In this document: piece by piece, positions 792-38,980 of the stretch | Numbering within the stretch: the stretch's first letter is position 1 | How the letters are laid out: each line of letters begins with the position of its first letter | Virus record (IMG/VR): IMGVR_UViG_3300044731_002337 | Location: 124,001-188,000 of that record | DNA length: 64,000 nucleotides | Direction: 5' to 3' (one strand) | Translations under genes and position numbers: made by a program | Notes under the pieces: generated by a model | Told to the model about the DNA's origin: nothing | Databases searched by the model: none | Seen by the model: only the letters and a program-made list of their open reading frames with translations

Positions 792-1829
792 TTAAATAAA
801 TTCTCCAAGGTCGTGAATGATTGTGGTTGTATTTTCGGATTCGTTTTTTAATTGGGCGTAATCAGTTTCCTTCTTCTCAAAAAAGTTGGTTTTCCCAAGC
901 AGTCCAATGCTCTTCATAAAGTCGAAGCGGTTTGAGGCATGAGGGTATAATATGGGAGCACCTATTGCGACTAAGAGGGTATTGGCTACACATTGAATGT
1001 ATTCGCACACATGGCGAAAGGGCAGTTGTGGAATGGGATCATCCGAATCCAATAGATGTTGAGCAAATTCACATTCAAATTCAACAAAGTCATGACAAAT
1101 AGCGTGAACTAGTGGGACTGTAAGTTTTTGATGAATTTCTTGGTAGATGAGAATCCAATTGACACAATGTTTGCCTTCATCCGCCATAATGTATTCGTTA
1201 CCTTCGACGAGGCCGTGGCATTTATTGTAAACGTAGCGAACCATGCATAGGTTGAGAAAGGAGGAAGAGAATAGGATACCTTCAGTGAAGAGCATGATGA
1301 CAACGCGAACAGGGAAAGGAGTCTTGTGAGTACAGAATTGTTGGGCCCAATTAAATTTCGGTTGAATGATGGGATCATGATAGACAGAGGAAAATAATAA
1401 TTCTCGTTCTTCAGGATCAGTTACTAATGTTTGAATGACTTGATTGTAGGTTTCAATATGTACCAACTCCATGGTAGCTGCATATTGAAGCATGAATCGT
1501 ATTTCGGGTACTTGAATGTCTTGTACTAGTTCATCAGCTAGACTTTCCAATACCAGGTTATCTGCATTAGCAAAGAAAGCCAAGGTTTTGAGAAGCATAC
1601 GTTGCACATTTTTGGGTAATGTAACAAAGTCTTGGCGATCAGAGGTATAATGAATCATATCTGCTCGCCATACAGATCGTTCTTGTGCCTTGTATTGATC
1701 CCATGCTTTAGGGTATTGAATAGGAAATAATTGGTAACGCTTTGCATGTAATAATGGTTCCAATTCTGGGTTAAAACGAAATGGATCAATGGGGGGTAAA
1801 GAATGGTTTTTGCGCTGATAGGAAAACAT
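792..1829 (-). CDS. nrdB: Ribonucleotide reductase small (beta/R2) subunit
   Basis: Ferritin-like R2 motifs: FFANADNLVLE, ELVHIETY, FTEGILFSSSF, DEGKH, C-terminal KTNFFEKKETDY. Confidence 0.95.
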   Translation of the reverse strand: MFSYQRKNHSLPPIDPFRFNPELEPLLHAKRYQLFPIQYPKAWDQYKAQERSVWRADMIHYTSDRQDFVTLPKNVQRMLLKTLAFFANADNLVLESLADELVQDIQVPEIRFMLQYAATMELVHIETYNQVIQTLVTDPEERELLFSSVYHDPIIQPKFNWAQQFCTHKTPFPVRVVIMLFTEGILFSSSFLNLCMVRYVYNKCHGLVEGNEYIMADEGKHCVNWILIYQEIHQKLTVPLVHAICHDFVEFECEFAQHLLDSDDPIPQLPFRHVCEYIQCVANTLLVAIGAPILYPHASNRFDFMKSIGLLGKTNFFEKKETDYAQLKNESENTTTIIHDLGEFI

Positions 1830-10004: not shown

Positions 10005-10560
10005 TTCTTTATTTTTATGTTATTGGGTGATATGGTTGTTCCACTTGCGTACCTATGTGCAATTCTTACATTTAAATGAAACCAGTTCTAATCTAGTGGC
10101 TATTTATGATCGAGTATTTCAAAAGTTACCTTTGATGGATGCTCAACTCTACATCACCTTTGTCATGGTACTCTTTTATGGGTGTGCGATATATGATATT
10201 TACAAACACAAGGAAAATTGGATAGTCGTATCAGATCACTATTTTTTATTAATTTCAATACGTATGATCATGATGAGCCTATTACCATTGAAGGCTTCGG
10301 ATCAGATGATCAGAGCAAGTGATGTATGGGATGTGTATACAGGGGCCTTGGTGAACGATTTATTCTTTTCTGGCCACGTAAGTTTAATTGCCTTGTTTTA
10401 TTTCCAGTTTGGGGAGCATTGGTATGGTTATTTGGTAATGGGAGTCGCAGTATCCATGGCCATGCTATTATGTCGTATGCATTATACCATTGATATCCTG
10501 GTAGCACCATTTATTAGTTTTGGGGTGGTGCATCTGCGAAAGTCTTGTTTTGGAGCATAG
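9997..10560 (+). CDS. Sphingomyelin/IPC-synthase-like PAP2_C membrane enzyme
   Basis: DLFFSGH and RMHYTIDILVA match the D3 and D4 catalytic motifs (H, H, D triad); multiple TM segments. Confidence 0.8.
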   Translation: MDISLFLCYWVIWLFHLRTYVQFLHLNETSSNLVAIYDRVFQKLPLMDAQLYITFVMVLFYGCAIYDIYKHKENWIVVSDHYFLLISIRMIMMSLLPLKASDQMIRASDVWDVYTGALVNDLFFSGHVSLIALFYFQFGEHWYGYLVMGVAVSMAMLLCRMHYTIDILVAPFISFGVVHLRKSCFGA

Positions 10561-13500
10561 ATAATGATTCAAGTGTATTCAAATCACTAGCGAATATTGC
10601 AAGTTTCTTATCCAAGTGAAGTTTGTTCTTCGTATCAATGGGTGGGAGGCATAAATTGAGGAATTGAGTGAATGCGGAAGTGGATAAATGTGCAGATAAA
10701 CCACAGCCTTTGATGCGTGAATCTTGATAGAGGTTTTGGATGTTGGAACTACTAAAATCTTTGACGACCCAGTTCATGATGTAAAAGTGAATGTGATTGG
10801 GGAGGTATGGGGAGCCAAATTGGAGGTGAATAAGGTAGTCTTTTGTAGCTACGGCGAGAAGATGACATGCCTTGTAAGTATCTTCTATGGTTGTGATGGT
10901 ATCTGAATCATAGGTACGATTTTGTCCTTCATAAAGTGAAAATTGTTTAAGAGGGATTTGTAAGGTCTTTTCAAGTAGTGTCTTGTGTTGAGAAATGAGG
11001 TTGATGATTTTGGCCATGACAACATTTGAATCCATGCCTACGACCACAGTGAGTACATGAGGTACCGTGTGAATCGTTACATGTCGTTGAAAGTTTCGTA
11101 TAGCTGTTTGCTCATCATCATCTTTAATGGGTGCAGTCACATCAACTTTGGGCTTATTATTGGTGATGGATTTTTCTAAGCTTTCTAAACGTTTTTGGAG
11201 AGCAGTTTGACCATTTCGTTGCGCATCAGCTAGGTCCTTCACATTTAAAGGTTCTTTGAGACCAGAAGTTTGTAATAATCGTGTGCTACGCTGTAAACTT
11301 GAATCATAAAGTTCTTGTAGATGAATGATTCGATCACGCTGATTACGTAATTGAATGGATTCATCTTTGACTTGTGCATTTATTTTATCTAAACGATCAC
11401 GTGTAATTTGATTGATCAGTTCATCGTCTTCAGCTTCATTGTCAAGTTGGATAACGATGGCCGGTGCTTTGGTGTCTAGATTTTCTTTCACTTGGGCTGC
11501 AGGGGCAATATCTTGTGTCTTTTGTATGAGGTCAACTTGGGTTAGGAGTGAATTGTGTCGATCTTTGAGTTCATCAATATCCTTGGGTGGATCCTTGGCA
11601 TGGATGAGTTCCTTAATTTGGTCCTGTGATTGACGAAGTTCTTTGACAATTGGTTTTAACCCATTCTCGGTTGTCGCTTCAGGTGCCTTGAGTTTTGCTG
11701 CTAATTTATCTTGTTGATCTCGAATTTGTTTGGGTTGTGGTGGTAGCATGAGTGAGTTGATACGTTCACGGGCGTCATTATATTTCAATGTGCATGCATC
11801 GATGGTGGTTTGGATGATAGTCGACGCCTTGGTTGGGTTTAATTCAAGATCATGGATACCCAACTCTTTGGCGGATCGAAGTTGGAGTAGAGTTTGAGTG
11901 ACAATGTGTTTCATTTGTTCACGAGCCCATTGACGATCAGTCTCTTTTGGGAAACGTTTAGGTAATTGAGAATCCAATAATTTACCCGTATCTTTTAATT
12001 GTTTCTCAATGAGTACAACCGCATCATTCAATTTATTCACCAATTCAGGTTCCTTTTTATTAACTTGTGATTCCAGTTCTTTTATTTTATTCTGTAATTG
12101 ATCTGTTTCCTTTTCATTGGACAAGAAACGATCCTGATACTTACGAAAGATTTGTAATTGTTCACCTTCTAGGGCACGTTTATCCTTAATGGCTTGATAA
12201 TCTGCTACTAAAATATTGTGCTGTTTTTGAGAAGCGATAATACGTTCTTCCAATTGTTTATTGAGAGCCAAAGCTTTCTCTAATTGATCTTGCCTGGATT
12301 CAGCGACTTGTTGGCGTTGTTCTAAATTGAGTACATGTTGTGCTTGACTAGCTGATTTCTTGTGACATGAATCTAGTTCATCGCGTATGGCTAAAATCTC
12401 TTGGTTCATTTGTTCGACATTGTCTGCTGATTTACAATGTTTAATTTTTTGTTTGTATTCCTGAAGCTCGTTTTCTAATTGTGACCGTTCTGCAGCGAGC
12501 ACTTTGGCCGTTTCTAATTGTTTAGCGACCTCGGCTTGAAGTTGCTTCGTAACGGTTTCACAAGTCATGGACGCCTCTTTGAGTTTTTGATTATCGGTTG
12601 CCATGGTCTTGAGACGTTCCAGCTCCAAACTTTGATTCTCAAACATGGCCTTTTTCATGTTGTACTCACTTTCCAATAGTTGATATTTGGTAGGGTCAGA
12701 GTGTGATACAAGTCGTTTGGTGAGTGTCTCGAGTTCTCGTTTTGCCTCCTTAAGTTGTGATTCCATTTCCTTCTTTTCGTTGGTGAGCTGTACAATAACC
12801 TGTGTAATCTTGGTGGTCTCTGGTTTGGTGGATTTCACAGGTGAAGTTGGATCAGTCAGTTTGGCCCGTAATTCTTCTAGACGTGAAATAGTCTCTGTTA
12901 TGGGTACTAACATGGGTTCATCTGCACGAATCGCCTTGACCTGTTCTGCTAATGAATGAATATGTTTCAGAAAGGCTCCATTTTTAGCGACACATGAAGT
13001 ACTGATATCATGGGCGAATCCAACGCGTTGTTCTACTTGTTGGTATTGAGTGTTCAGTTCATTCCAGCGTTTCTCCCAATCTGCTTCTTTCGCTTTCCAC
13101 GCCTTTTCATTGGCATCTTTCTCAGCAAGGATTCGTTTGACAGAAGAGTCTTTATCATCGATAAGCTTGGCAATAGAGGATTCCTTATCCGTCAAGATTT
13201 TTCGCAAGGTAACTTCTTTATCCTCGATAAGTTTCTTAATGGTTGAATCTTTGGAAAGGTTGGAAGCTTGATATTCGTCAGTTAGCTTTTTTATGGTGGA
13301 TTCACGTTCTTTGTGCACTTGATGTAGTTCTTGAGTAAGCTGTTTGATGCGTTGTTCTAATGTATAATATTGGGATTTAGCGTTTGCCAAGTTTTGTTTA
13401 TCAATAGGGGCATCATTGGTTAGGGTGGTAATCAATTCTAAAAGTGATGTCGTATCCTCATAAATGGTTTGTAATGATTGATGTTGGTCAATATAGGCAT

Positions 13501-13888
13501 TGTTTTGGTCCTTCAATTGATCATAAACTAGTTGAAGACGTGCAAGCTTAGTCTGATTATAATTAAATCGGTCAGTAACACGTGTTAGTTCAGCAGCGAC
13601 TTGATCACCTTGTTGAATAAATGTATTGATTTGAGTTTGTGTCTTGGATTTACAATCATCATTGGTACATGCAGCTAGTTCTTTGGTAAGACGATCACGT
13701 TGTTCTTGAAGTTGAAGACGTTGTTTGGTTAGGTCTTGACTTTGTAATTTCGCCTGGTTCATATCTTGGGTTAATTCATCTAATAGTTCTTTATAGTGTT
13801 GAATGATTTGTGTATTGGTTTCTGAACGGCTACGTAAAGAGGTATTATGTTGATTCAACTTTTCACGAATTCGTGTAAGTTCATTCAT
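10514..13888 (-). CDS. Large coiled-coil protein (about 1124 aa)
   Basis: Long heptad-rich Q/E/K/L sequence; likely start MNELTRI at 13888 after an A-run. Confidence 0.75.
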   Translation of the reverse strand: MNELTRIREKLNQHNTSLRSRSETNTQIIQHYKELLDELTQDMNQAKLQSQDLTKQRLQLQEQRDRLTKELAACTNDDCKSKTQTQINTFIQQGDQVAAELTRVTDRFNYNQTKLARLQLVYDQLKDQNNAYIDQHQSLQTIYEDTTSLLELITTLTNDAPIDKQNLANAKSQYYTLEQRIKQLTQELHQVHKERESTIKKLTDEYQASNLSKDSTIKKLIEDKEVTLRKILTDKESSIAKLIDDKDSSVKRILAEKDANEKAWKAKEADWEKRWNELNTQYQQVEQRVGFAHDISTSCVAKNGAFLKHIHSLAEQVKAIRADEPMLVPITETISRLEELRAKLTDPTSPVKSTKPETTKITQVIVQLTNEKKEMESQLKEAKRELETLTKRLVSHSDPTKYQLLESEYNMKKAMFENQSLELERLKTMATDNQKLKEASMTCETVTKQLQAEVAKQLETAKVLAAERSQLENELQEYKQKIKHCKSADNVEQMNQEILAIRDELDSCHKKSASQAQHVLNLEQRQQVAESRQDQLEKALALNKQLEERIIASQKQHNILVADYQAIKDKRALEGEQLQIFRKYQDRFLSNEKETDQLQNKIKELESQVNKKEPELVNKLNDAVVLIEKQLKDTGKLLDSQLPKRFPKETDRQWAREQMKHIVTQTLLQLRSAKELGIHDLELNPTKASTIIQTTIDACTLKYNDARERINSLMLPPQPKQIRDQQDKLAAKLKAPEATTENGLKPIVKELRQSQDQIKELIHAKDPPKDIDELKDRHNSLLTQVDLIQKTQDIAPAAQVKENLDTKAPAIVIQLDNEAEDDELINQITRDRLDKINAQVKDESIQLRNQRDRIIHLQELYDSSLQRSTRLLQTSGLKEPLNVKDLADAQRNGQTALQKRLESLEKSITNNKPKVDVTAPIKDDDEQTAIRNFQRHVTIHTVPHVLTVVVGMDSNVVMAKIINLISQHKTLLEKTLQIPLKQFSLYEGQNRTYDSDTITTIEDTYKACHLLAVATKDYLIHLQFGSPYLPNHIHFYIMNWVVKDFSSSNIQNLYQDSRIKGCGLSAHLSTSAFTQFLNLCLPPIDTKNKLHLDKKLAIFASDLNTLESLSMLQNKTFADAPPQN

Positions 13889-13933
13889 TTGCTCCTTTTT
13901 TTTTTTATTTATGACAGATAAAAGTAAAAAAAA

Positions 13934-14992
13934 ATGAAACATAGAGAGTTAACCCTTGTAACAGAAATCGATACTTTACATGATGTAATCTCACAAGGCG
14001 AAAAATCATGGATGGATCAATTGTCTAAGAAAGTAATCAATCCGCCTAAACTATGGCATAGAGTATATTATTATAAGCGTTTTTATCAACGATTTGCTGA
14101 AGCTCGTTATCGTTTTAATCATTTAATTTTACCAGTATTAGTGTGTAAATATCCTGATGCAACTAGACAAGTTCAATCGCTAGCTACTGCATTAGACATT
14201 TGGTATACGAATCCACAAGAGGACCGTTTCATATGTGATTTGATTCGAGCGATCAAGGTATGGTTACATGAAACACAAAAGAAGAGTGATGAGTATTTGC
14301 CAGTATTTCGAGAGTTGCGGAGGCAATTTGTGGTGGAAATATTGGTGAATAGGGATGTGATGATGGTAAAAAATAATATACATGAATTGATGATGTATTC
14401 TACTTTATTATGGTGTTCTCGAGGAGAGTCTCAATCTGAGATGGAATATAATCGTGGATTACCACATGAAGAGATGGCATCTGATGTACAAGATATATTG
14501 CGCCAGGTAAGGGAATATTGTCGAAAGTTAAGGTTCAAGAGGCCTCAAGAAGGGATTGCTATAAAGCATATGAGTCCATGTGAGCAATGGCATGAATTGG
14601 TATTGTATATCATGTCCTTATTTGAAATGAATCATATCATTGGTAAAGATGCATATGTCACAAGATATGAAAATGTGGATTGGATTTATATGAAGGATTG
14701 TAAAGAGATTGAATCGATTATTGAACATCCAAGTTTTTGGTTGAAGAAAAAGTTTGATATGTCATCTCCCATTGAGTTAAAGTTTAATTATTCGCAATGG
14801 TTACAGTCGAATAAGAATACGGGTTCATTGGATACTTTACCTATTCCATCTTCATTTTCTTATCATGTTAAAAATGATTGGACGGTTCAAGCACAAAAAG
14901 ATTCCCATTTGATTATAACGTCTCTGGCGATAGGCATGTGGATAGTTTACCGATTGAACCATTGGGTTATTGCTCACAGTATTCAACTATAA
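13934..14992 (+). CDS. Hypothetical protein with possible C-terminal TM
   Basis: 352 aa ORF. Confidence 0.7.
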   Translation: MKHRELTLVTEIDTLHDVISQGEKSWMDQLSKKVINPPKLWHRVYYYKRFYQRFAEARYRFNHLILPVLVCKYPDATRQVQSLATALDIWYTNPQEDRFICDLIRAIKVWLHETQKKSDEYLPVFRELRRQFVVEILVNRDVMMVKNNIHELMMYSTLLWCSRGESQSEMEYNRGLPHEEMASDVQDILRQVREYCRKLRFKRPQEGIAIKHMSPCEQWHELVLYIMSLFEMNHIIGKDAYVTRYENVDWIYMKDCKEIESIIEHPSFWLKKKFDMSSPIELKFNYSQWLQSNKNTGSLDTLPIPSSFSYHVKNDWTVQAQKDSHLIITSLAIGMWIVYRLNHWVIAHSIQL

Positions 14993-22779: not shown

Positions 22780-25700
22780 TTATGATGAGCAAGTATTGCA
22801 AACAACTGGTGTAGTAAAATTGAATTTGGTGGGCTTATCAATGGTGCGGAAATAGTAGCTGGCTGTTTTGAGGCCAAGATTCCAAGCAAAGCACCAGTAC
22901 TTGACAACTTCGATCGCCATATTCTCTCCACGTTTCATGTAGACATTGAGACTGATACTTTGGTCGACAAAACGAGAGCGATCGGCAGCCATGAGAGTAA
23001 TTTGGGCAAGTGGGATATCTACAATGGATCGGTAACGTTTCTTAATGTAATCCGGAATGGAAGCAATGTCGGTGAGTGATCCATTATTCGCTAGAATTTC
23101 ATCGTGAACAGGAATGGTAGATTTGGCATCAAATTTCCAAAGACCTGCTTCTTTGAGATCTCGTACCAGGTATTTGTTGAAGACATTGTATTCTCCAGTG
23201 TTCATGTATCGTTTGAAGCTACAGGCCAGGGCAGGTTCAAAGCATTCAAAGTTTCCTAAAATGATGGAAGTACCTGCAGTGGGCATATGAGCCATTAACA
23301 GGGAGTTGAGCATTTTGTTGGGTTTGGTCTTGATATCATGACGTAATTGGTCCCAGTTCCATCCGACACTTGTAGTAATATAGTCATGATGGGGTCTCTT
23401 TTCATAAATCTTTTGAGCCTGATTGTATTTGTCCCATAAATCTTGTTGTAAAATACCGGATTCAATGGGTGATCCAGCGATACTAGGATAATTGCCCCGT
23501 TCTTGAGCCAGGTCATGGGAACCTTTTAGGGCGGCATAATACATGGTTTCAGCGATTTGATAATTGAGACGTTGTGCTTCTTTTGAATCAAAGTCGAGTT
23601 TGAGGATCATAAACACATCTGCGAGTCCTTGAATGCCAATGCCAATAGGTCGATGTCTCATGTTGGAACGCCTTGTAGATTCCAGGGGATAAAAATTGAG
23701 GTCAATGACTTGGTTCATATGGTACACTAGATTATATACCACTTCATACAATTCTTGAAAATCGTATTGATCATCATGGATAAATGCCTTGAGGGAAACG
23801 GAGCACAAATTACAAACCGCGGTTTCTTCTGGTGAAGAGTATTCAATGATTTCTGTGCATAGATTAGATGATTTGATGGTACCGAGATTTTTTTGGTTGG
23901 ATTTGTGGTTACAGTGATCTTTGAATAGGATGTAAGGTCCGCCGGATTCGACTTGTGATTTGACAATGGCGAGGACAAACTCTCGAATGGGAACTTGTGC
24001 TTCATAGAGCCCTTGTGATTCATACTGGAGGTAGAGTTGTTCAAAAGCTTCACCATGCACGTCATCTAGCCCTCGACACTTTTGAGGGTTCATGAGGGAC
24101 CATACTTGTGGTTGATTGTGTTGATAATCTAGAATGATACGTTTCATGAACAAGTCGTTAACCCATAGAGCATAGAATAGGTCAGTAGCTGAAATGGTAT
24201 TGGCGGTCAAGGGGGATTTCAATTCTAAGAATTCCAAAACATCTGCATGCCATGGTTCTAGATAGACTGCAATGCTTCCTTTACGTTTACCACCACCATT
24301 ATGAGCGACCATACAGGATGTGACATAGGATGGGTCGGAGGACCTTTCCATTTCCAGGTCGAAGCAGTCATCAATGGTGGGTGGGCTGTGAATTACATTG
24401 TGAATAGGTAGACAGAGGTAGTTTTGGACTTGTATGCATGGTGTGAGGCGGCGACCATCTTGATCCTTGGGTGGCCATATCATACGGTATTCATTAGGAT
24501 AAATCTCCTCAATCAGAGCAAAAGAATATCCAAGTCGGTTAGCACAATATTCCAACGAATGCTTCTTTTGGGGGGAAACATTCTTTAACGTGGGACCTTG
24601 AAGTTCAAGACCTTCCATGAAATCGGCGACTTGGTCTAAGGGGGCGAATAGAATGGAGGCAGGAATGTCTTGTCGATTACATTGAAGTAGACCCATTAAT
24701 TGACCTTCAGGGATAATGATTTCCGTAGTGGAAAGACAGCGAACAGATACAATGGAAGATAACCAGGTTCGATCAATGTCTGGGCTTAGGAGGTGAAAGG
24801 TGATGAGTCCTTCTTGACATTGCCAGTTCATATCTGCGGTGATGAGGCCCAAGAGTTTTAAGAGATTTGAGTCGACATCAGGGATTCGTTTTTGGAGTTC
24901 AATGGTGTTGCAAATAGCGAGCCAGTGTTTGCGGGGATCGATTTCGTGGATGGTGGTGTAAAAGGGGAGAGCTCTTGATCCAAAGGTGTTGTCAATGACG
25001 AGAATAGGGTGAGAATCGGTGATGCCATGTGATACACGGTGATTAGGGAAAACTAAATGGTGGAATTGGAGTGATTTCTTGGTGGAAATAATTTTCTGAA
25101 TATGGTGAAAGTCTCCAAAACGGTTCATGACAAGATCATTGACTTGTAAGGATTGAATTTTGCGCCAACCAGTGGAAGTCATGACCCGGGTATCACCTTG
25201 AAAGCATTGGTCGACATAGCATGCTACAGAGTTATACACTTTGAGCATGGGTCCTACACCTCCAGTGACTCCATTAGTACCCTTGATATACGAATTCTTG
25301 CTACGGGTATTGTGGATGTTGATGCCAATGCCACCCGAGTGTTTGGAGATGATGCTACATTGCTTCCATCGATCAGCAATACCTTCAATGGAATCATCCC
25401 CAGCATATAAGAGAAAACATGAACTCATTTGGGGATGCATGGTTCCCGCGTTAAAGAGAGTAGGTGTAGCCATGATACATTTGCCCAGAGATAAATAATG
25501 ATACAACTGTATAGCTCTCTTGGTATTCATAGGGTTCAGGGCAATCGCTATTCTCATCCACATAAATTGTGGTTCCTCCAAAGGTACTGACACCATGATA
25601 TGCTGCCCATTATGTTCTACTCGCTTGTAAGTGTTGAGAAGGTATTTGCCATTAATAAGTTGGGTAATCGCCGCACAGTCAAATATAATGTTTCGATCAT

Positions 25701-26124
25701 GGTCAATTGTGGCTTCAATGAGGTCCATGTCAGGAATGTGTTCAAATGATTCGTGTAAGAGTGGTGACAACTCTCCCGTGCGTGGATTCACATTAGCGCG
25801 TGCTAGTCGAACATATTCTTTAAACGAATTTGGGGTGGATTTCTGGAGATTGGAGACTATAATTTGGCCGGCAAAGAGGTTATTGTCTGCAAAATAAGTA
25901 TCATGGGCGGCAACATTCGCAGATATAGTATCGAGTTCAGAGGTGGAAATGCCATCTGTAATTTGGTCAACTGTAGCACGGCATATTTTGAAAATTGACA
26001 CATCAATGGGACGTTTTAAGATACGGGTCATATGATCACGTATCGAGTTAAGACGTGCAGTAATTCGTTGAGGATCAATGGGTTCTTTTGTTCCATCACG
26101 GGTAGTAACACATCGAGGTTCCAT
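22780..26124 (-). CDS. nrdA: Ribonucleotide reductase large (alpha/R1) subunit, class Ia, containing an intein
   Basis: N-terminal ATP cone, ATPTLFNAG, MSSCFLL, GGIG, KGTNG, YVDQ/GGGKRKG, LEPWH, SNLCTEI, RPIGIGIQG, MPTAGTS, DQSIS, C-terminal CxxC. Confidence 0.97.
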   Translation of the reverse strand: MEPRCVTTRDGTKEPIDPQRITARLNSIRDHMTRILKRPIDVSIFKICRATVDQITDGISTSELDTISANVAAHDTYFADNNLFAGQIIVSNLQKSTPNSFKEYVRLARANVNPRTGELSPLLHESFEHIPDMDLIEATIDHDRNIIFDCAAITQLINGKYLLNTYKRVEHNGQHIMVSVPLEEPQFMWMRIAIALNPMNTKRAIQLYHYLSLGKCIMATPTLFNAGTMHPQMSSCFLLYAGDDSIEGIADRWKQCSIISKHSGGIGINIHNTRSKNSYIKGTNGVTGGVGPMLKVYNSVACYVDQCFQGDTRVMTSTGWRKIQSLQVNDLVMNRFGDFHHIQKIISTKKSLQFHHLVFPNHRVSHGITDSHPILVIDNTFGSRALPFYTTIHEIDPRKHWLAICNTIELQKRIPDVDSNLLKLLGLITADMNWQCQEGLITFHLLSPDIDRTWLSSIVSVRCLSTTEIIIPEGQLMGLLQCNRQDIPASILFAPLDQVADFMEGLELQGPTLKNVSPQKKHSLEYCANRLGYSFALIEEIYPNEYRMIWPPKDQDGRRLTPCIQVQNYLCLPIHNVIHSPPTIDDCFDLEMERSSDPSYVTSCMVAHNGGGKRKGSIAVYLEPWHADVLEFLELKSPLTANTISATDLFYALWVNDLFMKRIILDYQHNQPQVWSLMNPQKCRGLDDVHGEAFEQLYLQYESQGLYEAQVPIREFVLAIVKSQVESGGPYILFKDHCNHKSNQKNLGTIKSSNLCTEIIEYSSPEETAVCNLCSVSLKAFIHDDQYDFQELYEVVYNLVYHMNQVIDLNFYPLESTRRSNMRHRPIGIGIQGLADVFMILKLDFDSKEAQRLNYQIAETMYYAALKGSHDLAQERGNYPSIAGSPIESGILQQDLWDKYNQAQKIYEKRPHHDYITTSVGWNWDQLRHDIKTKPNKMLNSLLMAHMPTAGTSIILGNFECFEPALACSFKRYMNTGEYNVFNKYLVRDLKEAGLWKFDAKSTIPVHDEILANNGSLTDIASIPDYIKKRYRSIVDIPLAQITLMAADRSRFVDQSISLNVYMKRGENMAIEVVKYWCFAWNLGLKTASYYFRTIDKPTKFNFTTPVVCNTCSS
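24298..25206 (-). mobile_element. Intein (303 aa) with degenerate LAGLIDADG domain; C-extein +1 residue is Gly
   Basis: Starts CFQGDTRVMT, ends CFDLEM...CMVAHN; removal gives seamless YVDQ-GGGKRKGS; blocks LLGLITADM and FMEGLELQG are eroded LAGLIDADG motifs. Confidence 0.92.
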
Positions 26125-26141: not shown

Positions 26142-27770
26142 TTACGGGTTATTTGGTCTCGGAACTTTAGAACCACGTTTTATAGAATTATTTCCGCGCA
26201 CCTTGGCTCGAAGTACTTCCAAACGTTTAATTCTTTCTTTCGTATCCTCTTCACTTTCCTTGGCGAGTTTCTCACTTTCCACGAATTGTTGTTGAACCTC
26301 TTTGAATGTACTGGCAACACCTTGGTTTTGAGTGACAATATCATGAATCAAAGGGAAAAGTTTGGTGTTATTGACTTTCACAATCTCATCCGAAAGTTCA
26401 AAGACGTTGGACATGAGAATGCATGTAATAAAACGTTCATACATGGGCTGCGTAATATTCCATGAGGATTCCCACGCTTTTTGAGATTCATCAAACATAT
26501 GTTTAAAAAAACCAAGAAATTCCTTCTTTTCTTTATCGTTGGGGATATCATTAAACATACGGTTGATAAATGTAACACCATACGTTTTTCGATCATAGTA
26601 GTCCATGGCATCAATATAGGTCATTTCTTGTTGAATCACTCGATGAAGGACTAATTTATGGAAACCATTGCTAGAACAGAGTGATTTGAAATCAATAGCA
26701 TTTTCGTGATAGTCTACGATTCCAGGAAACTTTTTTGGAATGTTATTGGCCAAGTATTGTAGAGAGAGATAGATGAGAGTCTTGATAATGATGGTGAATG
26801 ATTCTACGGGATTGTCTTTTTGGTAATCTTTCAAGTTGGAAGCATTCATGAGATTAATGAAATGTTCCTTGTGAAAAATATAGAGTTCCATGAATAGGAT
26901 AGTCATAAAACGTACAAATTGAACGATGGTAGCGATTAAGATGAGACGTTTATAATAGTGGGTCCCAGGGACTTTATCACTATACCATGTAATATATGTC
27001 TTTTCATTGGCTTCTTTTTCCAACTCAGGCTTACGTGCAAATGTCTGAAAATCGTGAGCGAGGTAAGTGGAAATGTCATCGGGTAGATAACGGTGTAGAA
27101 AATAAATGTGCATGTATTGAGGTACTGTTCTTCGGTCTTCAATCGAGTCAAAATATGCGTGATCGCGTCGAAATTGTTGACGAACACTTGGCATTTTGAT
27201 GGTAACATAATGGGTGCGAAGAATATCATGATGTTCTTGGAGGAAACGGTGAAATGGTCGACAACAAACAGTGAGGCCCATGTAAAAAGGCATGGATCGA
27301 GGATTGGTACATGAATCTAAAAGTCCTGCTTGTTCTTCACATGCAAATACTCTTTTATACTTTTCAGAAGAAAAAGTCACAGGTAATTTATCGATTTGAT
27401 TGGGGTTTAAAAGTGAGACTTGACGTTTTTCAATGGTTTTACTTTGTAACTGACTAAGACCAGCTGAGATGCTAACATTAAATTTCATAAGATCTTCCTT
27501 CTCGATATCAGACATGATCATTAGTGTTACAAGTGCATCTCCATAATCCTGTTTCATCAATGCATCGTTATATTTGAGTTCAATCAATTGTTGAATTCGA
27601 GTATATTGTTCTTTGGTTTTGGTAAGATCTTGTTTGACTATATTGTTTTGGTCTTGCATGGTATTCTTATCATTGGTGATTAAGCTTACCAGCTGATTGA
27701 CTGCATTTACACTTTCAGCTGAGAAACCAGTATATTGATTGGGTATTGGAGCTGGTTGTAATTGGGACAT
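26142..27770 (-). CDS. Hypothetical protein
   Basis: 542 aa ORF with coiled-coil termini. Confidence 0.7.
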   Translation of the reverse strand: MSQLQPAPIPNQYTGFSAESVNAVNQLVSLITNDKNTMQDQNNIVKQDLTKTKEQYTRIQQLIELKYNDALMKQDYGDALVTLMIMSDIEKEDLMKFNVSISAGLSQLQSKTIEKRQVSLLNPNQIDKLPVTFSSEKYKRVFACEEQAGLLDSCTNPRSMPFYMGLTVCCRPFHRFLQEHHDILRTHYVTIKMPSVRQQFRRDHAYFDSIEDRRTVPQYMHIYFLHRYLPDDISTYLAHDFQTFARKPELEKEANEKTYITWYSDKVPGTHYYKRLILIATIVQFVRFMTILFMELYIFHKEHFINLMNASNLKDYQKDNPVESFTIIIKTLIYLSLQYLANNIPKKFPGIVDYHENAIDFKSLCSSNGFHKLVLHRVIQQEMTYIDAMDYYDRKTYGVTFINRMFNDIPNDKEKKEFLGFFKHMFDESQKAWESSWNITQPMYERFITCILMSNVFELSDEIVKVNNTKLFPLIHDIVTQNQGVASTFKEVQQQFVESEKLAKESEEDTKERIKRLEVLRAKVRGNNSIKRGSKVPRPNNP

Positions 27771-27838: not shown

Positions 27839-28441
27839 TTATGTGGTCATGGCTTTCATGGCTTGTCGTAGTTTCATGTAGCAGTGGCCTTGATAGATGG
27901 CGTCTGATAGTGCGTGGTGAATTTCTTCGTGAAGTCGTTTACCCCCTAATCGTTGCATAATGGTGGAGACATTAGTTCGATGCATTCTAGCGTATCCTCG
28001 AGCTAAGGAGATGAGACATTGACATGAAAAGCCTAGTTCAGTCTTATTGGGTGGGCCATACGCTTGAAAGTAGCATTTGAAAAACATCCAGTCGAAGCAA
28101 GCAGGGGAAGCAACCCATGTAATATGATGGAAAGGTGTGAAGAGCTTAAGCCAAGAGTCAATGGCGTTCATGGCTATATGGGGATCAAGTTGATTGATGC
28201 ATACTTCAGTGTAGAGTTTGGGATGTTTTAACCAGAAGTTGGACATACATTTAGGGTCTGCTACTTTGCCTTGTTGTGGTTTTACATTTTGGTAAAAAGT
28301 AGATACAATATGTCCATGTGAGTTGAAAAGTGCGATACCAATGGATAACATGTTGTGTTGTAATGGATTATCCCCATCCGCCTCAATGTCTAACGAGGCA
28401 TACAGTGGTGTCTTGTACATATTTTTATTTGCATTAAACAA
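27839..28441 (-). CDS. DEDDh 3'-5' exoribonuclease (RNase AS/Rv2179c-like)
   Basis: SLDIEADG, MLSIGIA, PACFDWMF, HHALSDAIYQ. Confidence 0.85.
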   Translation of the reverse strand: MFNANKNMYKTPLYASLDIEADGDNPLQHNMLSIGIALFNSHGHIVSTFYQNVKPQQGKVADPKCMSNFWLKHPKLYTEVCINQLDPHIAMNAIDSWLKLFTPFHHITWVASPACFDWMFFKCYFQAYGPPNKTELGFSCQCLISLARGYARMHRTNVSTIMQRLGGKRLHEEIHHALSDAIYQGHCYMKLRQAMKAMTT

Positions 28442-31629: not shown

Positions 31630-33669
31630 TTATGATAAAGAAGGTGGTTCTGGTGGTTGAGGTGGTGAAATGGAAGGTGAAGTGGGTAAGGAAGCTGGTA
31701 GTATATCTCGCGGTAATGAATCAAATGGAGGTAGATTTGATATCATAGTAATACGTTCATTGATACGTCGTTTCCATTGATCTGTAAAAGGTTGTTGTTC
31801 CAGGTCATCTACCAATGTAACGAAAAAGGGAATAGAAGCCCAGTTAGCTGACGTATGTTGTAAAGCACTTCGTAACGCATCATAAGGTTCTTCTAAAGGA
31901 TATTTCTGTAAAGCATAATTGAAAAAAGTGGATAGTAAATTAGGATTAGGTGGTAGTTCAGTCAGATTTACATAGAGTATTTGTCCATCGAGAGTTGTAG
32001 CTTGTTGAGTGAGCAAGTTGTACTGCATGACTTGTGGACTATAATCAAAAAACTTACGAATGGTAGCAAACACTTGATTGGCTTGTTGGCGAGTAAGTTC
32101 ACCTCGAATATCTAATTGCCGTTGTGGGTTAAGTTGTTTTCGCAAATACTCCCGTTTACTTAATCGATTAAATGCAGACCTAAATTCAATAGCACTTGAA
32201 AGTTTCATGGATGGGAAATGGTTAGCGTCATTATTAGTCGACATCATCTCTAGTTGAGAAGGATCTTGTTCGCGGCGTTGTACAACTTCATAAATAGGGG
32301 TTTTCAATAATTCATTCAATGTATGTGTATTTCTTTCATGTAATTCTTTGGCCTTGTCACGAACATCTGCTCGAGCTGGAATGACTGCAACGACGGGTTG
32401 GGCAGCGACTTCAGCCACATTATCTTTTTGAATGAGATTTCCTAGGCAAGTAGTAAATTGTTTAATGGCATCATAATTATCAATTTGAATATTGGCGGAT
32501 GCAGCCTTTCGATCATCATCTGGTGGCGTTGGAGCCGGATGTTTCATAAAATAAAGCAACATATCAAACATGGTCGTCAATAAATAATTCGCATTTGCCG
32601 CATCGAGTTCATATTCCTCAGTAAGAATTTGAAATAGATTGATTTGGGGATCACATGCATATTGATTGTCACCAAACAGGAAATTGGCTACATCATCTTC
32701 ATTTTGAGTGTACTTGCGAAATACATCTATAACATTCTTCCTAGTTTTGCATTTGAGTGTTATGTTATTACGGCGATATAAGGATAAGGCTGCAGTGCGC
32801 CAGGAAATGAGAAACTCGCATGCATATTGATGGTTTAGAATTTGACTACGATCTTCAGGAAAGCTGTAGGTTACGTGTGTGAATACATGGGAGAAAATAT
32901 TGGCAAAGTTGGAGGAGCTTTGATTGGTATGTCTCCAGAATAAGTTGAAAGGTGATTGTTTGAATTCAAATACCTTTTTGTTGTTCAAAGCTCGTGGTTT
33001 CAAGTGTTTGATGGGGCATGATTTATGTTTGTAGAGTCCACCTTGTTTATCTTGTGTGGATAAAGGTTCATGGCAAGCGGGGCACTGAATAGGTTTTTGG
33101 AAACATTCATGACAGACAGCATGTTCTTCTACGCCTTGATTATGAGTGTCGCAAACATAGTTCGTTTTGCAATAAAAACATGGGGCTATATTGGTGCGTG
33201 ATTGACATTCGTAGCATGTGATGGGGCATTTATGGTTGAATTCTTGTATGCCGCAAATGGGGCACTTTTGGATGGTGATGGTTGTACCTCCATATTCGGT
33301 GAGAACTGGGGAGCCATTATCTAATAGGGTGGATTTGAGACGATGAATGCGTAGCCAAGTGATGGTAATAGGATCGACATCCGTTTTGGGTAAGTACCAT
33401 TCTTTGGAGACGTCATAATAGGTATCTGTCTTATTTTGGAAGCGCATGAAATCGTACCATACGAGATCACCACGGACATGTCTACGCCAATAGACTTGAT
33501 GTTGACCTAATGAGAGGGATGGACAATGACGAATATCATCAGGTGGAATAACTTGGGGTAATGTTTTGGGTAAAGAATAAGGAGGCATCAATGGTCGAAG
33601 ATATTGTTCTTGAAAACATCTTATAAATGGTATTTCATTCTCATGATAACAAGAAGGTAAATGAATCAT
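31630..33669 (-). CDS. Hypothetical protein with multiple CxxC zinc-binding motifs
   Basis: CPICG, CYEC, CFYC, CHEC, CPACH. Confidence 0.7.
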   Translation of the reverse strand: MIHLPSCYHENEIPFIRCFQEQYLRPLMPPYSLPKTLPQVIPPDDIRHCPSLSLGQHQVYWRRHVRGDLVWYDFMRFQNKTDTYYDVSKEWYLPKTDVDPITITWLRIHRLKSTLLDNGSPVLTEYGGTTITIQKCPICGIQEFNHKCPITCYECQSRTNIAPCFYCKTNYVCDTHNQGVEEHAVCHECFQKPIQCPACHEPLSTQDKQGGLYKHKSCPIKHLKPRALNNKKVFEFKQSPFNLFWRHTNQSSSNFANIFSHVFTHVTYSFPEDRSQILNHQYACEFLISWRTAALSLYRRNNITLKCKTRKNVIDVFRKYTQNEDDVANFLFGDNQYACDPQINLFQILTEEYELDAANANYLLTTMFDMLLYFMKHPAPTPPDDDRKAASANIQIDNYDAIKQFTTCLGNLIQKDNVAEVAAQPVVAVIPARADVRDKAKELHERNTHTLNELLKTPIYEVVQRREQDPSQLEMMSTNNDANHFPSMKLSSAIEFRSAFNRLSKREYLRKQLNPQRQLDIRGELTRQQANQVFATIRKFFDYSPQVMQYNLLTQQATTLDGQILYVNLTELPPNPNLLSTFFNYALQKYPLEEPYDALRSALQHTSANWASIPFFVTLVDDLEQQPFTDQWKRRINERITMISNLPPFDSLPRDILPASLPTSPSISPPQPPEPPSLS

Positions 33670-38028: not shown

Positions 38029-38980
38029 TCATTGGATTACGGGAAAGGGAAGTAGTTCATTCACAGAAATATTTTCAGCAATGGCGATAATGGTGTCTGT
38101 AACTTGTTTCCATGTAAAAGGTAGTGATTGTGAGGGACCAGAAATGATCCATTGTGCATCACGGTATTCGCATGCCACAACAGCATTCTTGGGGAGAGGA
38201 TAAGGACAAATAGCGGCCGAAATGATGACATTATCTTTGGATTTGAGTAGATAGTCGCCTTGATAGAAGCGGTAGTATTGTACTGTCGAAGGAGTTCCAT
38301 CAGGCCAAGGTAATTCTCGAATCGATTCAAATGGTTGAATAGTACAATAAATGCGATGTGATCGTAATCGTAATTGGGGTATTACTTTAGATCCGTATGA
38401 TGATGAAGAAGAAGAAGAAGAAGATAATGCTTCAGATGAAGTATCCATGAAATCCAAGGCTTCAATAGGTAGCATGTAGGTAAATTTTAGAATATGACTC
38501 ATTTCCACTAGTGGTTTGACATGAAGTCCAAAGGGAATTTCAGGATGATGCACTACCTTATTATACAATGTGGGGTAAAGTGATGATTTCACTACGCAAG
38601 GGGATACAGAGATGGAGGTAGTTGAAGCAGTAGGACATTTCGAGATCATTTGAATGGCTTGAATGGCTAATTCCCATCGTTGATCGTACCTGAGATGTTT
38701 GGCAGGGTTTCCACACATCATATAACAATCCATAATCGTAAAGCAAAATCCTTGGTCGTTAAGTTGAACCATTTCTCCATCGAGTACGGTTCCAGCAAAT
38801 AATGGGATAGGTAGTTTGGAAGGCATATGTTTCAGTTTGGTGGTCTTCTTTTGTTGATCCATGAGAAAGAGTTGTATGCAGTTCTTGTATGTGGTGAATA
38901 ATAATAGCCCGCGGATACCATTTAAGTAAGGTACCATGACATAACGTTGAGGTTGGAATTCGAGTTTCTTGGGTCGAAAG
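38029..38980 (-). other. Degenerate mRNA-capping guanylyltransferase plus OB domain fused to RPB1
   Basis: YVMVPYLNGIR (motif I KxDG changed to YLNG), TVLDGEMV (III), FTIMDCYMMCG (IIIa), YDQRW, VVACEY...W, TIIAIAENISVNELL. Confidence 0.75.

What the first reader, a model, noticed from the sequence alone, without database searches (positions are those of the whole stretch)
24298..25206. RNR intein with Gly at +1 lacks the nucleophile needed for canonical splicing
Seen: YVDQ|CFQGD...VAHN|GGGKRKG. The intein has Cys1 and terminal His-Asn, but the first C-extein residue is Gly rather than Cys, Ser or Thr. Established: standard splicing needs the +1 nucleophile, and the R1 catalytic cysteines lie on both sides of this site (SSCF upstream, NLCTE downstream), so both halves are required. 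Inference: either non-canonical ligation (aminolysis of the thioester by the freed Gly amine, as proposed for BIL domains), double cleavage giving a two-chain RNR, or tolerance of the unspliced insert. The LAGLIDADG motifs look eroded, so homing is probably lost.
Basis: partly seen in the sequence, partly recalled or inferred. Interest (0 to 1): 0.75.

Follow-up and report, generated by a model that had tools for sequence, protein, structure and literature searches.

The report
Glycine-flanked intein in viral RNR
A self-excising protein insert (intein) in a giant virus's ribonucleotide reductase is followed by glycine, not the cysteine, serine or threonine that textbook protein splicing needs; this is the conserved state of a large, apparently working intein family in giant viruses and bacteria, which suggests a splicing route without a side-chain nucleophile that has not been described for true inteins.

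Summary
The RNR large-subunit gene (22780-26124, minus strand) carries a 303-aa intein (24298-25206) reading YVDQ|CFQGD...VAHN|GGGKRKG. Contigs from four metagenome runs show no variant at the Gly+1 codon (GGT).

It is not a one-off defect. The intein sits in specificity loop 2, between the residues matching yeast/human Q288 and G289. Of 133 diverged RNRs with an intein at this site, 100 have Gly+1 and 33 have Ser+1 (the catalogued CroV allele). The Gly+1 set keeps Cys1/Ser1 (100/100), block-B His (100), block-F Asp (99), penultimate His (97) and terminal Asn (100). On the intein tree the +1 state changes only twice.

Gly+1 carriers include Pandoravirus and Cedratvirus isolates (listed as inteins in a 2018 census, without comment), the only RNR of a complete Neolewinella chromosome, mini-inteins and naturally split inteins.

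Best explanation (inferred, about 0.55): a thioester forms at Cys1, Asn609 cyclises, and the freed Gly alpha-amine attacks the thioester, as proposed for type-A BIL domains. This restores a native QGGG loop. The main rival is cleavage at both junctions giving a two-chain RNR. An unspliced insert is unlikely.

I found no paper discussing the missing nucleophile.

The parts
22780..26124 (-). RNR large (alpha) subunit gene, 1114 codons, interrupted in frame by one intein. It is the only PF02867 gene in the 295-kb virus record.
25207..26124 (-). N-extein (aa 1-306). It has a weak ATP-cone match, the all-alpha domain, the catalytic Cys in SSCF (aa 234-237, 25414-25425), and ends with loop-2 YVDQ (25207-25218).
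   Evidence: profile positions 1-15 align to human RRM1 and yeast Rnr1 residues 274-288
24298..25206 (-). Intein, 303 aa (aa 307-609): a HINT splicing domain with a nested, diverged LAGLIDADG-like domain.
   Evidence: AF2 model pLDDT 81, pTM 0.83; Foldseek top hits are the TliVMA, PhoVMA and PI-SceI inteins, E 1e-12; Pfam Hint_2 weak hit
25183..25206 (-). Intein block A, CFQGDTRV. The Cys1 codon is TGC at 25204-25206.
   Evidence: Cys or Ser at this position in 100/100 Gly+1 relatives
25009..25020 (-). Intein block B, TDSH (T369, H372).
   Evidence: His 100/100 and Thr 89/100 in Gly+1 relatives
24829..24864 (-). LAGLIDADG motif 1, LLKLLGLITADM. The acidic residue D431 is kept; the final Gly is replaced by Met.
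24592..24621 (-). LAGLIDADG motif 2, FMEGLELQGP. The catalytic acid is replaced by Gln509.
24319..24366 (-). Intein block F, CFDLEM...DPSYVT. Asp589 (F:4) is kept. The usual block-F His is Pro598 in this clade.
24298..24312 (-). Intein block G, MVAHN. Penultimate His608 and terminal Asn609 (AAT at 24298-24300).
   Evidence: Asn 100/100 and His 97/100 in Gly+1 relatives
24277..24297 (-). Start of the C-extein, GGGKRKG, the second half of loop 2. Gly+1 is GGT at 24295-24297. There is no Cys, Ser or Thr before +8.
   Evidence: no variant in the contigs
22780..24297 (-). C-extein (aa 610-1114). It holds the thiyl-radical finger loop SSNLCTEI (23848-23871), the YY radical-transfer pair (22846-22860) and the C-terminal CNTC redox pair (22783-22800).
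792..1829 (-). RNR small (beta) subunit gene, intact. It shows the virus encodes both subunits.
   Evidence: PF00268, 203 bits

Best explanation
The insert is a real intein with intact splicing chemistry. It belongs to a large family that occupies one site in class I RNR alpha subunits, in the middle of specificity loop 2, between the residues matching yeast/human Q288 and G289. The usual first C-extein residue in this family is the host's own Gly, not Cys, Ser or Thr.

The most likely way it works has three steps, all inferred. (1) Cys307 makes the N-S acyl shift, turning the Q306-C307 peptide bond into a thioester. (2) Asn609 cyclises to a succinimide and cuts the intein from the C-extein, freeing the alpha-amine of Gly610. 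(3) That amine is unhindered and is held in place because the two RNR halves are already folded together (or, in the split versions, by the joined intein halves). It attacks the thioester directly and forms the native Q-G peptide bond.

The product is a continuous RNR with loop 2 reading YVDQGGGKRKG, as in intein-free relatives, with no scar. This is the chemistry proposed for type-A bacterial intein-like (BIL) domains, here in an element that is otherwise a class 1 intein.

Shown here: the sequence, the site, the fold, conservation of every catalytic residue except +1, the depth and stability of the Gly+1 state, and carriage by the only RNR of a bacterium. Inferred: that ligation occurs, and that it occurs by aminolysis.
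For: Sequence and fold:
- The junctions are confirmed. The AF2 model and Foldseek give a HINT plus LAGLIDADG intein fold.
- Site: profile positions 1-15 align to human RRM1 and yeast Rnr1 residues 274-288, so -1 is Q288 and +5 is R293. These loop-2 residues contact substrates and effectors, and mutating them unbalances dNTP pools or is lethal (PMC2896522).

Family:
- A profile search of 1.84 billion representatives gave 467 hits at E<=1e-30.
- Among the best 150 plus earlier hits, 133 RNRs carry an intein at this site: 100 Gly+1 (GGG 60, GGK 23, GGR 10) and 33 Ser+1.
- In the Gly+1 set: Cys1 98 plus Ser1 2, block-B His 100, Thr 89, block-F Asp 99, penultimate His 97, terminal Asn 100.
- The +1 state needs only 2 changes on a 133-row intein tree (shuffled mean 29.5; 0 of 500 shuffles as low), with branch lengths above 1 substitution per site inside Gly+1 clades.
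- About 60 IMG/VR giant-virus loci with both junctions are all Gly+1, including mini-inteins of 148-195 aa.

The host enzyme is needed and under selection:
- In a complete Neolewinella chromosome the Gly+1 gene is the only PF02867 hit, and no NrdD was found.
- In the window clade, extein dN/dS is about 0.05, and the HINT-N and endonuclease-like regions 0.06-0.17.
- The virus also encodes the beta subunit.

Other support:
- Naturally split Gly+1 inteins at the same site keep Cys1, TxxH, block-F Asp and HN.
- Removing the intein exactly gives YVDQGGGKRKGS. Intein-free NCLDV RNRs read YVNQGGGKRKGS, YVNQGGKRNGS and YVDQGGRRKGS.
- Precedent: type-A BILs have a C-terminal His-Asn and no +1 nucleophile, and they splice by this proposed route (PMC4031507 section 8; PMC7664689).
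Against: - There is no biochemical evidence for any member. Nothing here shows a ligated product.
- In type-A BILs and in class 1 inteins mutated at +1, cleavage products dominate over splicing. Efficient aminolysis would therefore need an adaptation that I cannot point to.
- The residues that differ between Gly+1 and Ser+1 inteins (Pro after the block-B His; block F:6) may only reflect lineage.
- Conservation of Cys1 and His-Asn fits double cleavage without ligation equally well.
- A split NrdA is fully active in phage Aeh1 (PMC3045599).
- Two Gly+1 inteins begin with Ser1. The resulting oxyester would be aminolysed more slowly.
- The 100:33 ratio is biased, because the query profile included GGGKRKG flanks and only the best 150 hits were listed.
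- The Neolewinella record is a MAG labelled complete, not an isolate.
- dS is saturated, so the dN/dS values are rough.
Confidence: 0.55

Rival explanations
1. Double cleavage without ligation. Thioester hydrolysis at Cys1 and Asn cyclisation release the intein. The two RNR halves (aa 1-306 and 610-1114) stay together non-covalently as a two-chain alpha subunit with a nicked loop 2.
For: Cleavage is the main outcome for type-A BILs and for inteins that lack a +1 nucleophile. Phage Aeh1 has a fully active NrdA encoded as two polypeptides (PMC3045599). Conservation of Cys1, TxxH and His-Asn fits this reading as well as it fits ligation. The RNR barrel halves are interlocked.
Against: The nick would fall between Q288 and G289 in the loop that carries specificity information and contacts substrates. 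Point mutations there already unbalance dNTP pools or are lethal. The Aeh1 split is at a different site (between the C439 and C462 equivalents), and it needs special tails; without them activity drops about 2000-fold. None of 1200 nrdA genes surveyed was split. Uncatalysed thioester hydrolysis is slow next to a nearby amine (general chemistry). If two chains were enough, the split-gene lineages would not need to keep catalytic intein halves.
Confidence: 0.22
2. The intein is not removed. RNR works with a 303-aa domain hanging from loop 2, or the gene is a dead relic and the host supplies dNTPs.
For: Viruses of eukaryotes can use the host RNR. Loop 2 is a surface-exposed flexible loop. The window clade sits on a long branch (2.42 substitutions per site) and has lost one LAGLIDADG acid and the block-F His.
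Against: All splicing residues are conserved across 100 diverged clusters, which an inert insert would not need. Extein dN/dS is about 0.05 with every RNR catalytic residue intact, so the gene is not a relic. A bacterium carries the allele in its only RNR. Loop 2 must reach both the specificity site and the catalytic site. Mini, full-length and split forms (148-535 aa) all occupy the site, which argues against a specific structural role for the insert.
Confidence: 0.05
3. Splicing uses another nucleophile instead of the Gly alpha-amine. Candidates are a branched intermediate on an intein side chain (as in class 3), a Lys epsilon-amine of GGGKRKG, Ser at +8, or a host factor.
For: [quoted passage not shown] A BIL domain linked to ubiquitin-like conjugation appears among the fold matches (6y75). 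The window clade has Ser at +8.
Against: Block F:4 is Asp in 99/100, not the Cys of the class 3 WCT motif, and Cys1 is present. Ser +8 is Ala in most relatives, and the Lys positions shift or become Arg, Val or Asn (GGKRKG, GGRRKG, GGVRKG, GGNKRPG). An isopeptide product would not restore loop 2. Carriers span bacteria, giant viruses of amoebae and of algae, so a shared host factor is unlikely.
Confidence: 0.1
4. Artefact. The Gly codon is a sequencing or assembly error, or the intein boundaries are misplaced.
For: GGT is one substitution away from AGT (Ser) or TGT (Cys). The record is a metagenome assembly.
Against: There is no variant at the codon in contigs of four runs. The junction is identical in five relatives that are only 65-68% identical in the intein and in about 100 distant ones. 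It is also identical in isolate genomes listed by others (Pandoravirus, Cedratvirus). Both boundaries are fixed by the extein alignment (YVDQ / GGGKRKG) and by intein blocks A and G.
Confidence: 0.01

Closest known systems
Pandoravirus salinus, dulcis and inopinatum, and Cedratvirus A11, RNR large-subunit inteins, as catalogued in Green, Novikova & Belfort 2018 (PMC5784728, supplementary file 3)
   Same: Same host protein and same site (…YVDQ| or …YVNQ|C…HN|GGGKRKG or GGRRKG). Gly at +1, Cys1 and terminal His-Asn. They are members of the same allele family.
   Different: About 25-35% identical to the window intein. The Pandoravirus inteins are larger (488-535 aa). They were listed as inteins with no remark on the missing nucleophile and no biochemistry. 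The window intein belongs to a separate, fast-evolving freshwater clade with a degraded endonuclease motif.
Cafeteria roenbergensis virus (CroV) RIR1 intein (InBase; YP_003970087)
   Same: Same insertion site in loop 2 (…RYVNQ|C…GIVHN|SGRRKG). Related HINT and LAGLIDADG sequence. It represents the 33 Ser+1 relatives.
   Different: It has the canonical Ser at +1, replacing the first loop-2 Gly, so the standard class 1 mechanism applies and the spliced host carries QSG rather than QGG.
Type-A bacterial intein-like (BIL) domains, e.g. Clostridium thermocellum BIL (PDB 2lwy)
   Same: A HINT domain with Cys1, a C-terminal His-Asn and a non-nucleophilic +1 residue. The proposed route is thioester formation, Asn cyclisation, then aminolysis by the freed amine. 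There is a weak sequence match (E 4e-5) and a fold match.
   Different: BILs sit in variable bacterial proteins rather than at conserved sites of essential enzymes. They lack homing endonucleases and give mostly cleavage. The window element matches canonical inteins (VMA, PI-SceI, gp41-1) at least as well as it matches BILs.
Class 1 LAGLIDADG inteins with solved structures (TliVMA 7qsu, PhoVMA 7qst, PI-SceI 1vde, PI-PkoII 2cw7)
   Same: Best sequence and fold matches over both the HINT and endonuclease domains. Blocks A, B, F and G are all present.
   Different: All of them have Cys, Ser or Thr at +1.
CIV-type viral RIR1 inteins (Chilo iridescent virus, chloroviruses, marseilleviruses)
   Same: Inteins in NCLDV RNR large subunits.
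   Different: They use a different site (SNL|C[T/S/M]E, at the thiyl-radical Cys) with canonical Cys+1. Many end in Gln instead of Asn.
Phage Aeh1 split NrdA (NrdA-a / mobE / NrdA-b)
   Same: An RNR alpha subunit broken by a mobile element yet active. It is the precedent for the two-chain rival.
   Different: It has no intein, the break is between the C439 and C462 equivalents, and assembly depends on special tails.

Membership tests
Intein (class 1, canonical) | HINT fold, inserted in frame in a host protein | tested here: met
   AF2 model pLDDT 81. Foldseek E about 1e-12 to VMA and PI-SceI inteins. Profile hits to PDB inteins. Weak Pfam Hint_2 hit, 20.7-22.7 bits, below the 28.4 cut-off.
Intein (class 1, canonical) | N-terminal Cys or Ser (block A) and block B TxxH | tested here: met
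   C307 and T369-D-S-H372. Conserved in relatives.
Intein (class 1, canonical) | C-terminal His-Asn (block G) and block F Asp | tested here: met
   H608, N609 and D589. Asn 100/100, His 97/100 and Asp 99/100 in Gly+1 relatives.
Intein (class 1, canonical) | Cys, Ser or Thr as the first C-extein residue (+1) | tested here: not met
   Gly610 (GGT, 24295-24297), supported by contigs and by 100 of 133 same-site relatives.
Intein (class 1, canonical) | Conserved site of an essential host protein, shared with a catalogued intein allele | tested here: met
   RNR loop 2, Q288|G289 equivalent. Same site as the CroV RIR1 intein listed in InBase.
Intein (class 1, canonical) | Demonstrated protein splicing (excision plus ligation) | not testable with these tools
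   No biochemical or proteomic data are reachable. Function is inferred from conservation and from carriage in the sole RNR.
LAGLIDADG homing endonuclease (active) | Two LAGLIDADG motifs, each with a catalytic Asp or Glu | tested here: not met
   Motif 1 keeps D431. Motif 2 has Q509 (ELQG) in all four window-clade members shown. No PF14528 hit. The fold is retained and dN/dS is about 0.1-0.15.
Type-A BIL domain | HINT domain with Cys1, C-terminal His-Asn and a non-nucleophilic C-flank | tested here: met
   definition from PMC4031507
Type-A BIL domain | Found in variable, non-conserved bacterial proteins; no homing endonuclease; not at conserved enzyme sites | tested here: not met
   It sits in a conserved loop of an essential enzyme with a nested LAGLIDADG domain, and mostly in giant viruses. 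The context criterion rests partly on my own knowledge of BIL literature.
Class 2 intein | No N-terminal nucleophile (e.g. Ala1); the +1 nucleophile attacks the N-junction directly | tested here: not met
   Cys1 is present and the +1 nucleophile is absent.
Class 3 intein | WCT motif: Trp in block B, Cys at F:4, Thr at G:5; no Cys1 or Ser1 | tested here: not met
   F:4 is Asp589, G:5 is Ala607, and Cys1 is present.
Class I RNR alpha subunit (NrdA / eukaryote-like R1) | Barrel domain with SSCF Cys, NxCxE finger loop, YY pair and C-terminal CxxC | tested here: met
   TIGR02506 564 bits (cut-off 341) and PF02867 532 bits. Residues C236, N754, C756, E758, Y1090, Y1091, C1109 and C1112.

The most novel reading that the evidence does not exclude
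The loop-2 RNR inteins with Gly+1 are a fourth mechanistic class of true inteins. They are mobile, carry homing endonucleases, sit in an essential enzyme, and splice efficiently with no C-extein side-chain nucleophile, by direct attack of the freed Gly alpha-amine on the Cys1 thioester. The class is widespread in giant viruses and some Bacteroidota, includes natural split versions, and has been catalogued but never recognised as mechanistically different.
Probability: 0.4. Interest if true: 0.9.

Novelty: new variant of a known kind. Interest (0 to 1): 0.78.

Why it matters
The rule that a +1 Cys, Ser or Thr is required underlies how inteins are defined, how they are found in genomes, and where they can be used in protein engineering.

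A large natural family that appears to give working RNR with Gly at +1 would have several consequences:
- It would show that true inteins, not only BIL domains, can ligate through the backbone amine.
- It would explain how an intein can occupy a site whose native residue is Gly without leaving a scar in a loop that controls dNTP balance.
- It would mean that intein censuses which require a +1 nucleophile under-count inteins. One apparently un-annotated example sits inside a listed 'N-extein' of CeV01.
- It would offer contiguous, mini and naturally split scaffolds for traceless ligation at Gly, without a Cys or Ser scar.

If these inteins only cleave, then many giant viruses and a bacterium run on a two-chain RNR nicked in its specificity loop. 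That would also be unexpected for RNR enzymology.

Tried and rejected
- **Sequencing error at +1.** Rejected by contigs from four runs and by relatives.
- **Shifted intein boundaries or a nearby nucleophile.** Rejected. The exteins align residue for residue with intein-free RNRs. Ser +8 and the Lys positions are not conserved.
- **Class 2 or class 3 mechanism.** Rejected on motif grounds.
- **Sporadic inactivating mutation of a Ser+1 intein.** Rejected. The +1 state changes only twice on the tree, and all other catalytic residues are kept.
- **Aeh1 split site as a same-site precedent.** It is a different site. The split NrdA inteins of Dassa 2009 are at the thiyl-Cys site, not loop 2.
- **Aquifex RNR intein.** It is in the beta subunit and is not relevant.
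- **Literature.** Eight full-text searches and several papers gave no discussion of a Gly+1 intein. Two wanted papers (PMC1851037, PMC5487555) and the supplement of Novikova 2016 are not held.
- **Close relatives in IMG/VR.** A search with exact peptide patterns found none. The alignment-based scan found L011.
- **DNA for relative P0003.** It could not be fetched.
- **Other RNR genes in Pandoravirus and large IMG/VR records.** The records are not held.
- **Sample of 200 genomes of the Neolewinella order.** Only that genome carries the allele. This fits a sporadic mobile element but adds no further essential-gene cases.
- **dN/dS.** dS is saturated in many pairs, so I use only the qualitative result that dN is much smaller than dS.
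Full report
**1. What is in the window**

The ORF at 22780..26124 on the minus strand encodes a 1114-aa class I ribonucleotide reductase large subunit. It scores 564 bits against TIGR02506 (cut-off 341) and 532 bits against PF02867, the latter split into two stretches. Translation across the reported interval reads ...VYNSVACYVDQ|CFQGDTRVMTS...SYVTSCMVAHN|GGGKRKGSIAVYLEPWH.

Cys1 is TGC at 25204-25206, Asn609 is AAT at 24298-24300, and Gly+1 is GGT at 24295-24297. SSCF (aa 234-237) lies upstream. The NLCTE finger loop (752-759), the YY pair and the C-terminal CNTC lie downstream.

The window is part of a 294,773-base IMG/VR virus record. It also encodes Rpb1- and Rpb2-like RNA polymerase subunits, an SNF2 helicase and an intact RNR small subunit at 792-1829. 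This is a giant virus (Nucleocytoviricota) from lake water. The intein-bearing gene is the only RNR alpha gene in the record.

**2. Is Gly+1 real?**

Contigs from four lake or freshwater metagenome runs, from four studies, cover the stretch. The only difference listed is A>G at 25051 in one run, and nothing differs at the +1 codon. Two of the runs may be the source sample, and contigs drop rare variants.

The stronger evidence is that relatives only 65-68% identical in the intein, from other assemblies (P0002-P0005 and L011), all read AHN|GGGKRKG.

**3. It is an intein by fold and motifs**

An AlphaFold2 model of the intein with 15-residue flanks has mean pLDDT 81 and pTM 0.83. Its best Foldseek matches are endonuclease-containing inteins (TliVMA, PhoVMA, PI-SceI, PI-PkoII) at E of 1e-12 to 1e-8. 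Mini-inteins, hedgehog and BIL domains match the HINT part. A profile of the family finds the same PDB inteins by sequence.

Block A (CFQGDTRV), block B (TDSH), block F (FDLEM...SYVT) and block G (VAHN) are all present. In the endonuclease part, motif 1 (LLGLITADM) keeps its Asp, while motif 2 (EGLELQGP) has Gln where relatives have the catalytic Asp. Pfam no longer reports a LAGLIDADG domain.

**4. Where it sits**

The 15 N-extein residues of the profile align to residues 274-288 of human RRM1 and yeast Rnr1. The junction therefore lies between the residues matching Q288 and G289, and R293 is at +5.

This is loop 2, which carries information from the specificity site to the catalytic site. 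Q288 contacts substrates. Mutations at Y285, D287, Q288 and R293 unbalance dNTP pools, and some are lethal (PMC2896522). A 303-aa domain left in this loop, or a nick in it, should matter to the enzyme.

Removing the insert exactly gives YVDQGGGKRKGS. This matches intein-free NCLDV enzymes, for example YVNQGGGKRKGS in Yellowstone lake phycodnavirus 2, YVNQGGKRNGS in AaV and YVDQGGRRKGS in Marseillevirus.

**5. Gly+1 is the conserved state of a large family**

The first homology search already showed that distant same-site inteins (28-41% identical, several with Pfam LAGLIDADG and intein-splicing domains) also read HN|GG(G)KRKG.

A profile of the intein plus flanks, searched against 1.84 billion representative proteins, gave 467 hits at E<=1e-30. 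I aligned the best 150, the earlier hits and three bacterial loci to the profile. That gave 133 RNRs with both junctions at this site: 100 with Gly+1 (GGG 60, GGK 23, GGR 10, others 7) and 33 with Ser+1 (SGK or SGR).

In the Gly+1 set the catalytic residues are kept as follows:

| Residue | Kept in Gly+1 set (of 100) |
|---|---|
| Position 1 | Cys 98, Ser 2 |
| Block-B His | 100 |
| Block-B Thr | 89 |
| Block-F Asp | 99 |
| Penultimate His | 97 |
| Terminal Asn | 100 |

On a maximum-likelihood tree of the 133 inteins (exteins and +1 excluded) the +1 state needs only two changes. The shuffled mean is 29.5, and 0 of 500 shuffles were as low. Gly+1 clades are separated by more than one substitution per site. 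Gly+1 is therefore old, stable and diversified. It is not a scatter of recent inactivations. Most Ser+1 inteins form one clade of 28.

There is a caveat. The profile contained GGGKRKG flanks and only the top 150 hits were returned, so the 100:33 ratio is biased. The existence of about 100 diverged Gly+1 clusters is not affected.

**6. Who carries it**

- IMG/VR holds at least 86 loci. About 60 of the 80 fetched have both junctions, and all of those are Gly+1. They include mini-inteins of 148-195 aa and inteins of 488-535 aa on contigs of 1,908,524, 2,243,109 and 2,473,870 bases.
- From memory, those three sizes match the Pandoravirus dulcis, inopinatum and salinus genomes. The N-terminal intein sequence (CFSGDTLVLTAE...) matches the Pandoravirus entries in the supplement of Green, Novikova & Belfort 2018.
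- That supplement lists the three Pandoravirus RNR inteins and the Cedratvirus A11 intein with C-exteins starting GGGKRKG or GGRRKG. It makes no remark on the +1 residue. The main text mentions nucleophiles only in general terms.
- The same supplement lists the CroV RIR1 intein (an InBase entry) at this site with Ser+1...RYVNQ|C...GIVHN|SGRRKG.
- It gives a CeV01 'N-extein' that contains what looks like an un-annotated loop-2 intein (ARYIDQCVVPETY...).
- Bacterial carriers include two Bacteroidota MAGs and a complete Neolewinella chromosome. In that chromosome the Gly+1 gene is the only PF02867 hit and no NrdD was found. A free-living bacterium therefore appears to depend on this precursor.
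- In a sample of 200 other genomes of the same order, none had the allele. That fits a sporadic mobile element.
- Both LAGLIDADG acids are kept in 42 of 100 Gly+1 inteins and 16 of 33 Ser+1 inteins. The Gly+1 elements look no less mobile.

**7. Split versions**

Eleven IMG/VR loci (two of them truncated) encode the RNR in two ORFs broken inside the intein at this same site. The N-ORF ends with YVDQ|C followed by a 107-108-aa N-intein. The C-ORF starts with a 65-70-aa C-intein ending (I/L/V)VHN|GGG(R/K)RKG.

In some loci the two ORFs abut or overlap. In others a 296-aa ORF lies between them. It matches DUF7487 (69 bits) and has weak similarity to PD-(D/E)xK nucleases, so it is probably a free-standing homing endonuclease. 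This is the 'fractured gene' layout described by Dassa et al. 2009, whose NrdA cases are at a different site. Cys1, TxxH, the block-F Asp and His-Asn are all kept in these split inteins.

**8. Selection in the window clade**

For the window, L009, L010 and L011, dN is far below dS in every region:

| Region | dN/dS |
|---|---|
| Exteins | about 0.05 |
| HINT-N | 0.06-0.17 |
| Endonuclease-like region | 0.09-0.15 |

dS is saturated, so these numbers are rough. The clade sits on a long branch, and the usual block-F His is Pro. The intein is nevertheless not decaying neutrally.

**9. Mechanism**

What is shown is that every residue needed for thioester formation and for Asn cyclisation is kept, that the nucleophile needed for transesterification is missing, and that the host enzyme is under selection and in one case is the only RNR.

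The simplest reading is the route proposed for type-A BIL domains: N-S acyl shift at Cys1, C-terminal cleavage by Asn cyclisation, then attack of the freed alpha-amine on the thioester (PMC4031507 section 8; PMC7664689).

I infer two site-specific advantages. Gly gives the least hindered amine. The two RNR halves are already interlocked, so the amine cannot diffuse away. The payoff would be a native QGG loop rather than the QSG left by the Ser+1 allele. I put this at about 0.55.

The rivals are:
- **Double cleavage to a two-chain RNR (about 0.22).** Cleavage dominates in BILs, and phage Aeh1 shows that a split NrdA can work. That split is at another site and needs special tails.
- **Another nucleophile (about 0.1).** There is no conserved candidate.
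- **An unprocessed insert or dead gene (about 0.05).**
- **An artefact (about 0.01).**

**10. Known or new**

Inteins at this site are known (CroV, Ser+1). Gly+1 members from isolates sit in a published table. The window's intein is a new member of an existing allele family.

Eight full-text searches and the intein reviews and censuses I read contain no statement that these inteins lack the +1 nucleophile, and no test of how they process. The library omits most subscription journals, so a description elsewhere cannot be excluded.

I rate it a new variant of a known kind. It is an intein in every respect except the one residue that defines the canonical mechanism, and it probably works like a type-A BIL.

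Noticed in passing
L030:2182-6258 (also L032, L033, L046, L058, L059; with a spacer ORF in L022, L024, L025, L029, L031): Naturally split inteins at the same RNR loop-2 site, all with Gly+1. The N-ORF ends YVDQ|C plus a 107-108-aa N-intein. The next ORF starts with a 65-70-aa C-intein ending VHN|GGG(R/K)RKG. The halves abut or overlap in some loci and are about 0.93 kb apart in others.
   Followed up: partly
L031:3411-4301 (+): A 296-aa ORF lies between the two split-intein halves. It matches DUF7487 (69 bits) and has weak similarity to PD-(D/E)xK nucleases (phage endonuclease I, TnsA-N, AHJR-like). It is probably a free-standing homing endonuclease, present in some loci and absent in others.
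   Followed up: partly
L030:3382-6258 (+): The C-terminal RNR ORF of this split locus carries a second, contiguous intein at the thiyl-radical site (SSNL|CIAGDQ...LTYN|CTEILEY) with canonical Cys+1. One RNR gene therefore hosts a Gly+1 split intein and a canonical intein.
   Followed up: no
Green et al. 2018 (PMC5784728), supplementary file 3, CeV01 YP_009173474 entry: The 'N-extein' given for the Chrysochromulina ericina virus RNR contains ARYIDQCVVPETYIYTKNG...EITPQHPILV. This looks like an un-annotated loop-2 intein of the family studied here. The C-junction is cut off in the table, so its +1 residue was not seen.
   Followed up: partly
L088, L089, L090 (contigs of 1.91, 2.24 and 2.47 Mb): The loop-2 inteins on these contigs, whose sizes match Pandoravirus genomes, are unusually long (488-535 aa). 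They have a low-complexity acidic insert and end GACHN|GGGKRKGAFA. P. salinus has a second, canonical intein further downstream in the same gene.
   Followed up: partly
P0107 and P0113: Two related bacterial-type RNR inteins combine Ser1 (AVNQ|S...) with Gly+1, and one has GSKRKG. An oxyester plus an amine nucleophile would be an even less favourable pairing.
   Followed up: no
profile columns 82 and 336 of /scratch/all.sto (window P373, E590): The residue after the block-B His is Pro in 82% of Gly+1 inteins but Gln, Glu or Asp in Ser+1 inteins. Block F:6 is Glu, Lys or Gln against Asn. This could be a lineage effect or an adaptation to the missing nucleophile.
   Followed up: no
window 792-1829 (-), 38029-42936 (-), 59318-62758 (+), 8100-10004 (-), 27839-28441 (-): Context genes: RNR small subunit, Rpb1-like and Rpb2-like RNA polymerase subunits, an SNF2-family helicase and an Rv2179c-like 3'-5' exonuclease. 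This is typical of a giant-virus genome. Several long ORFs (10514-13942, 31630-33669, 44263-46035, 46491-48362, 26142-27770) have no Pfam match.
   Followed up: partly
window 24298-25206: The intein DNA is slightly richer in G+C (44.4%) than the exteins (41.5-42.5%) and the window as a whole (38.6%).
   Followed up: no
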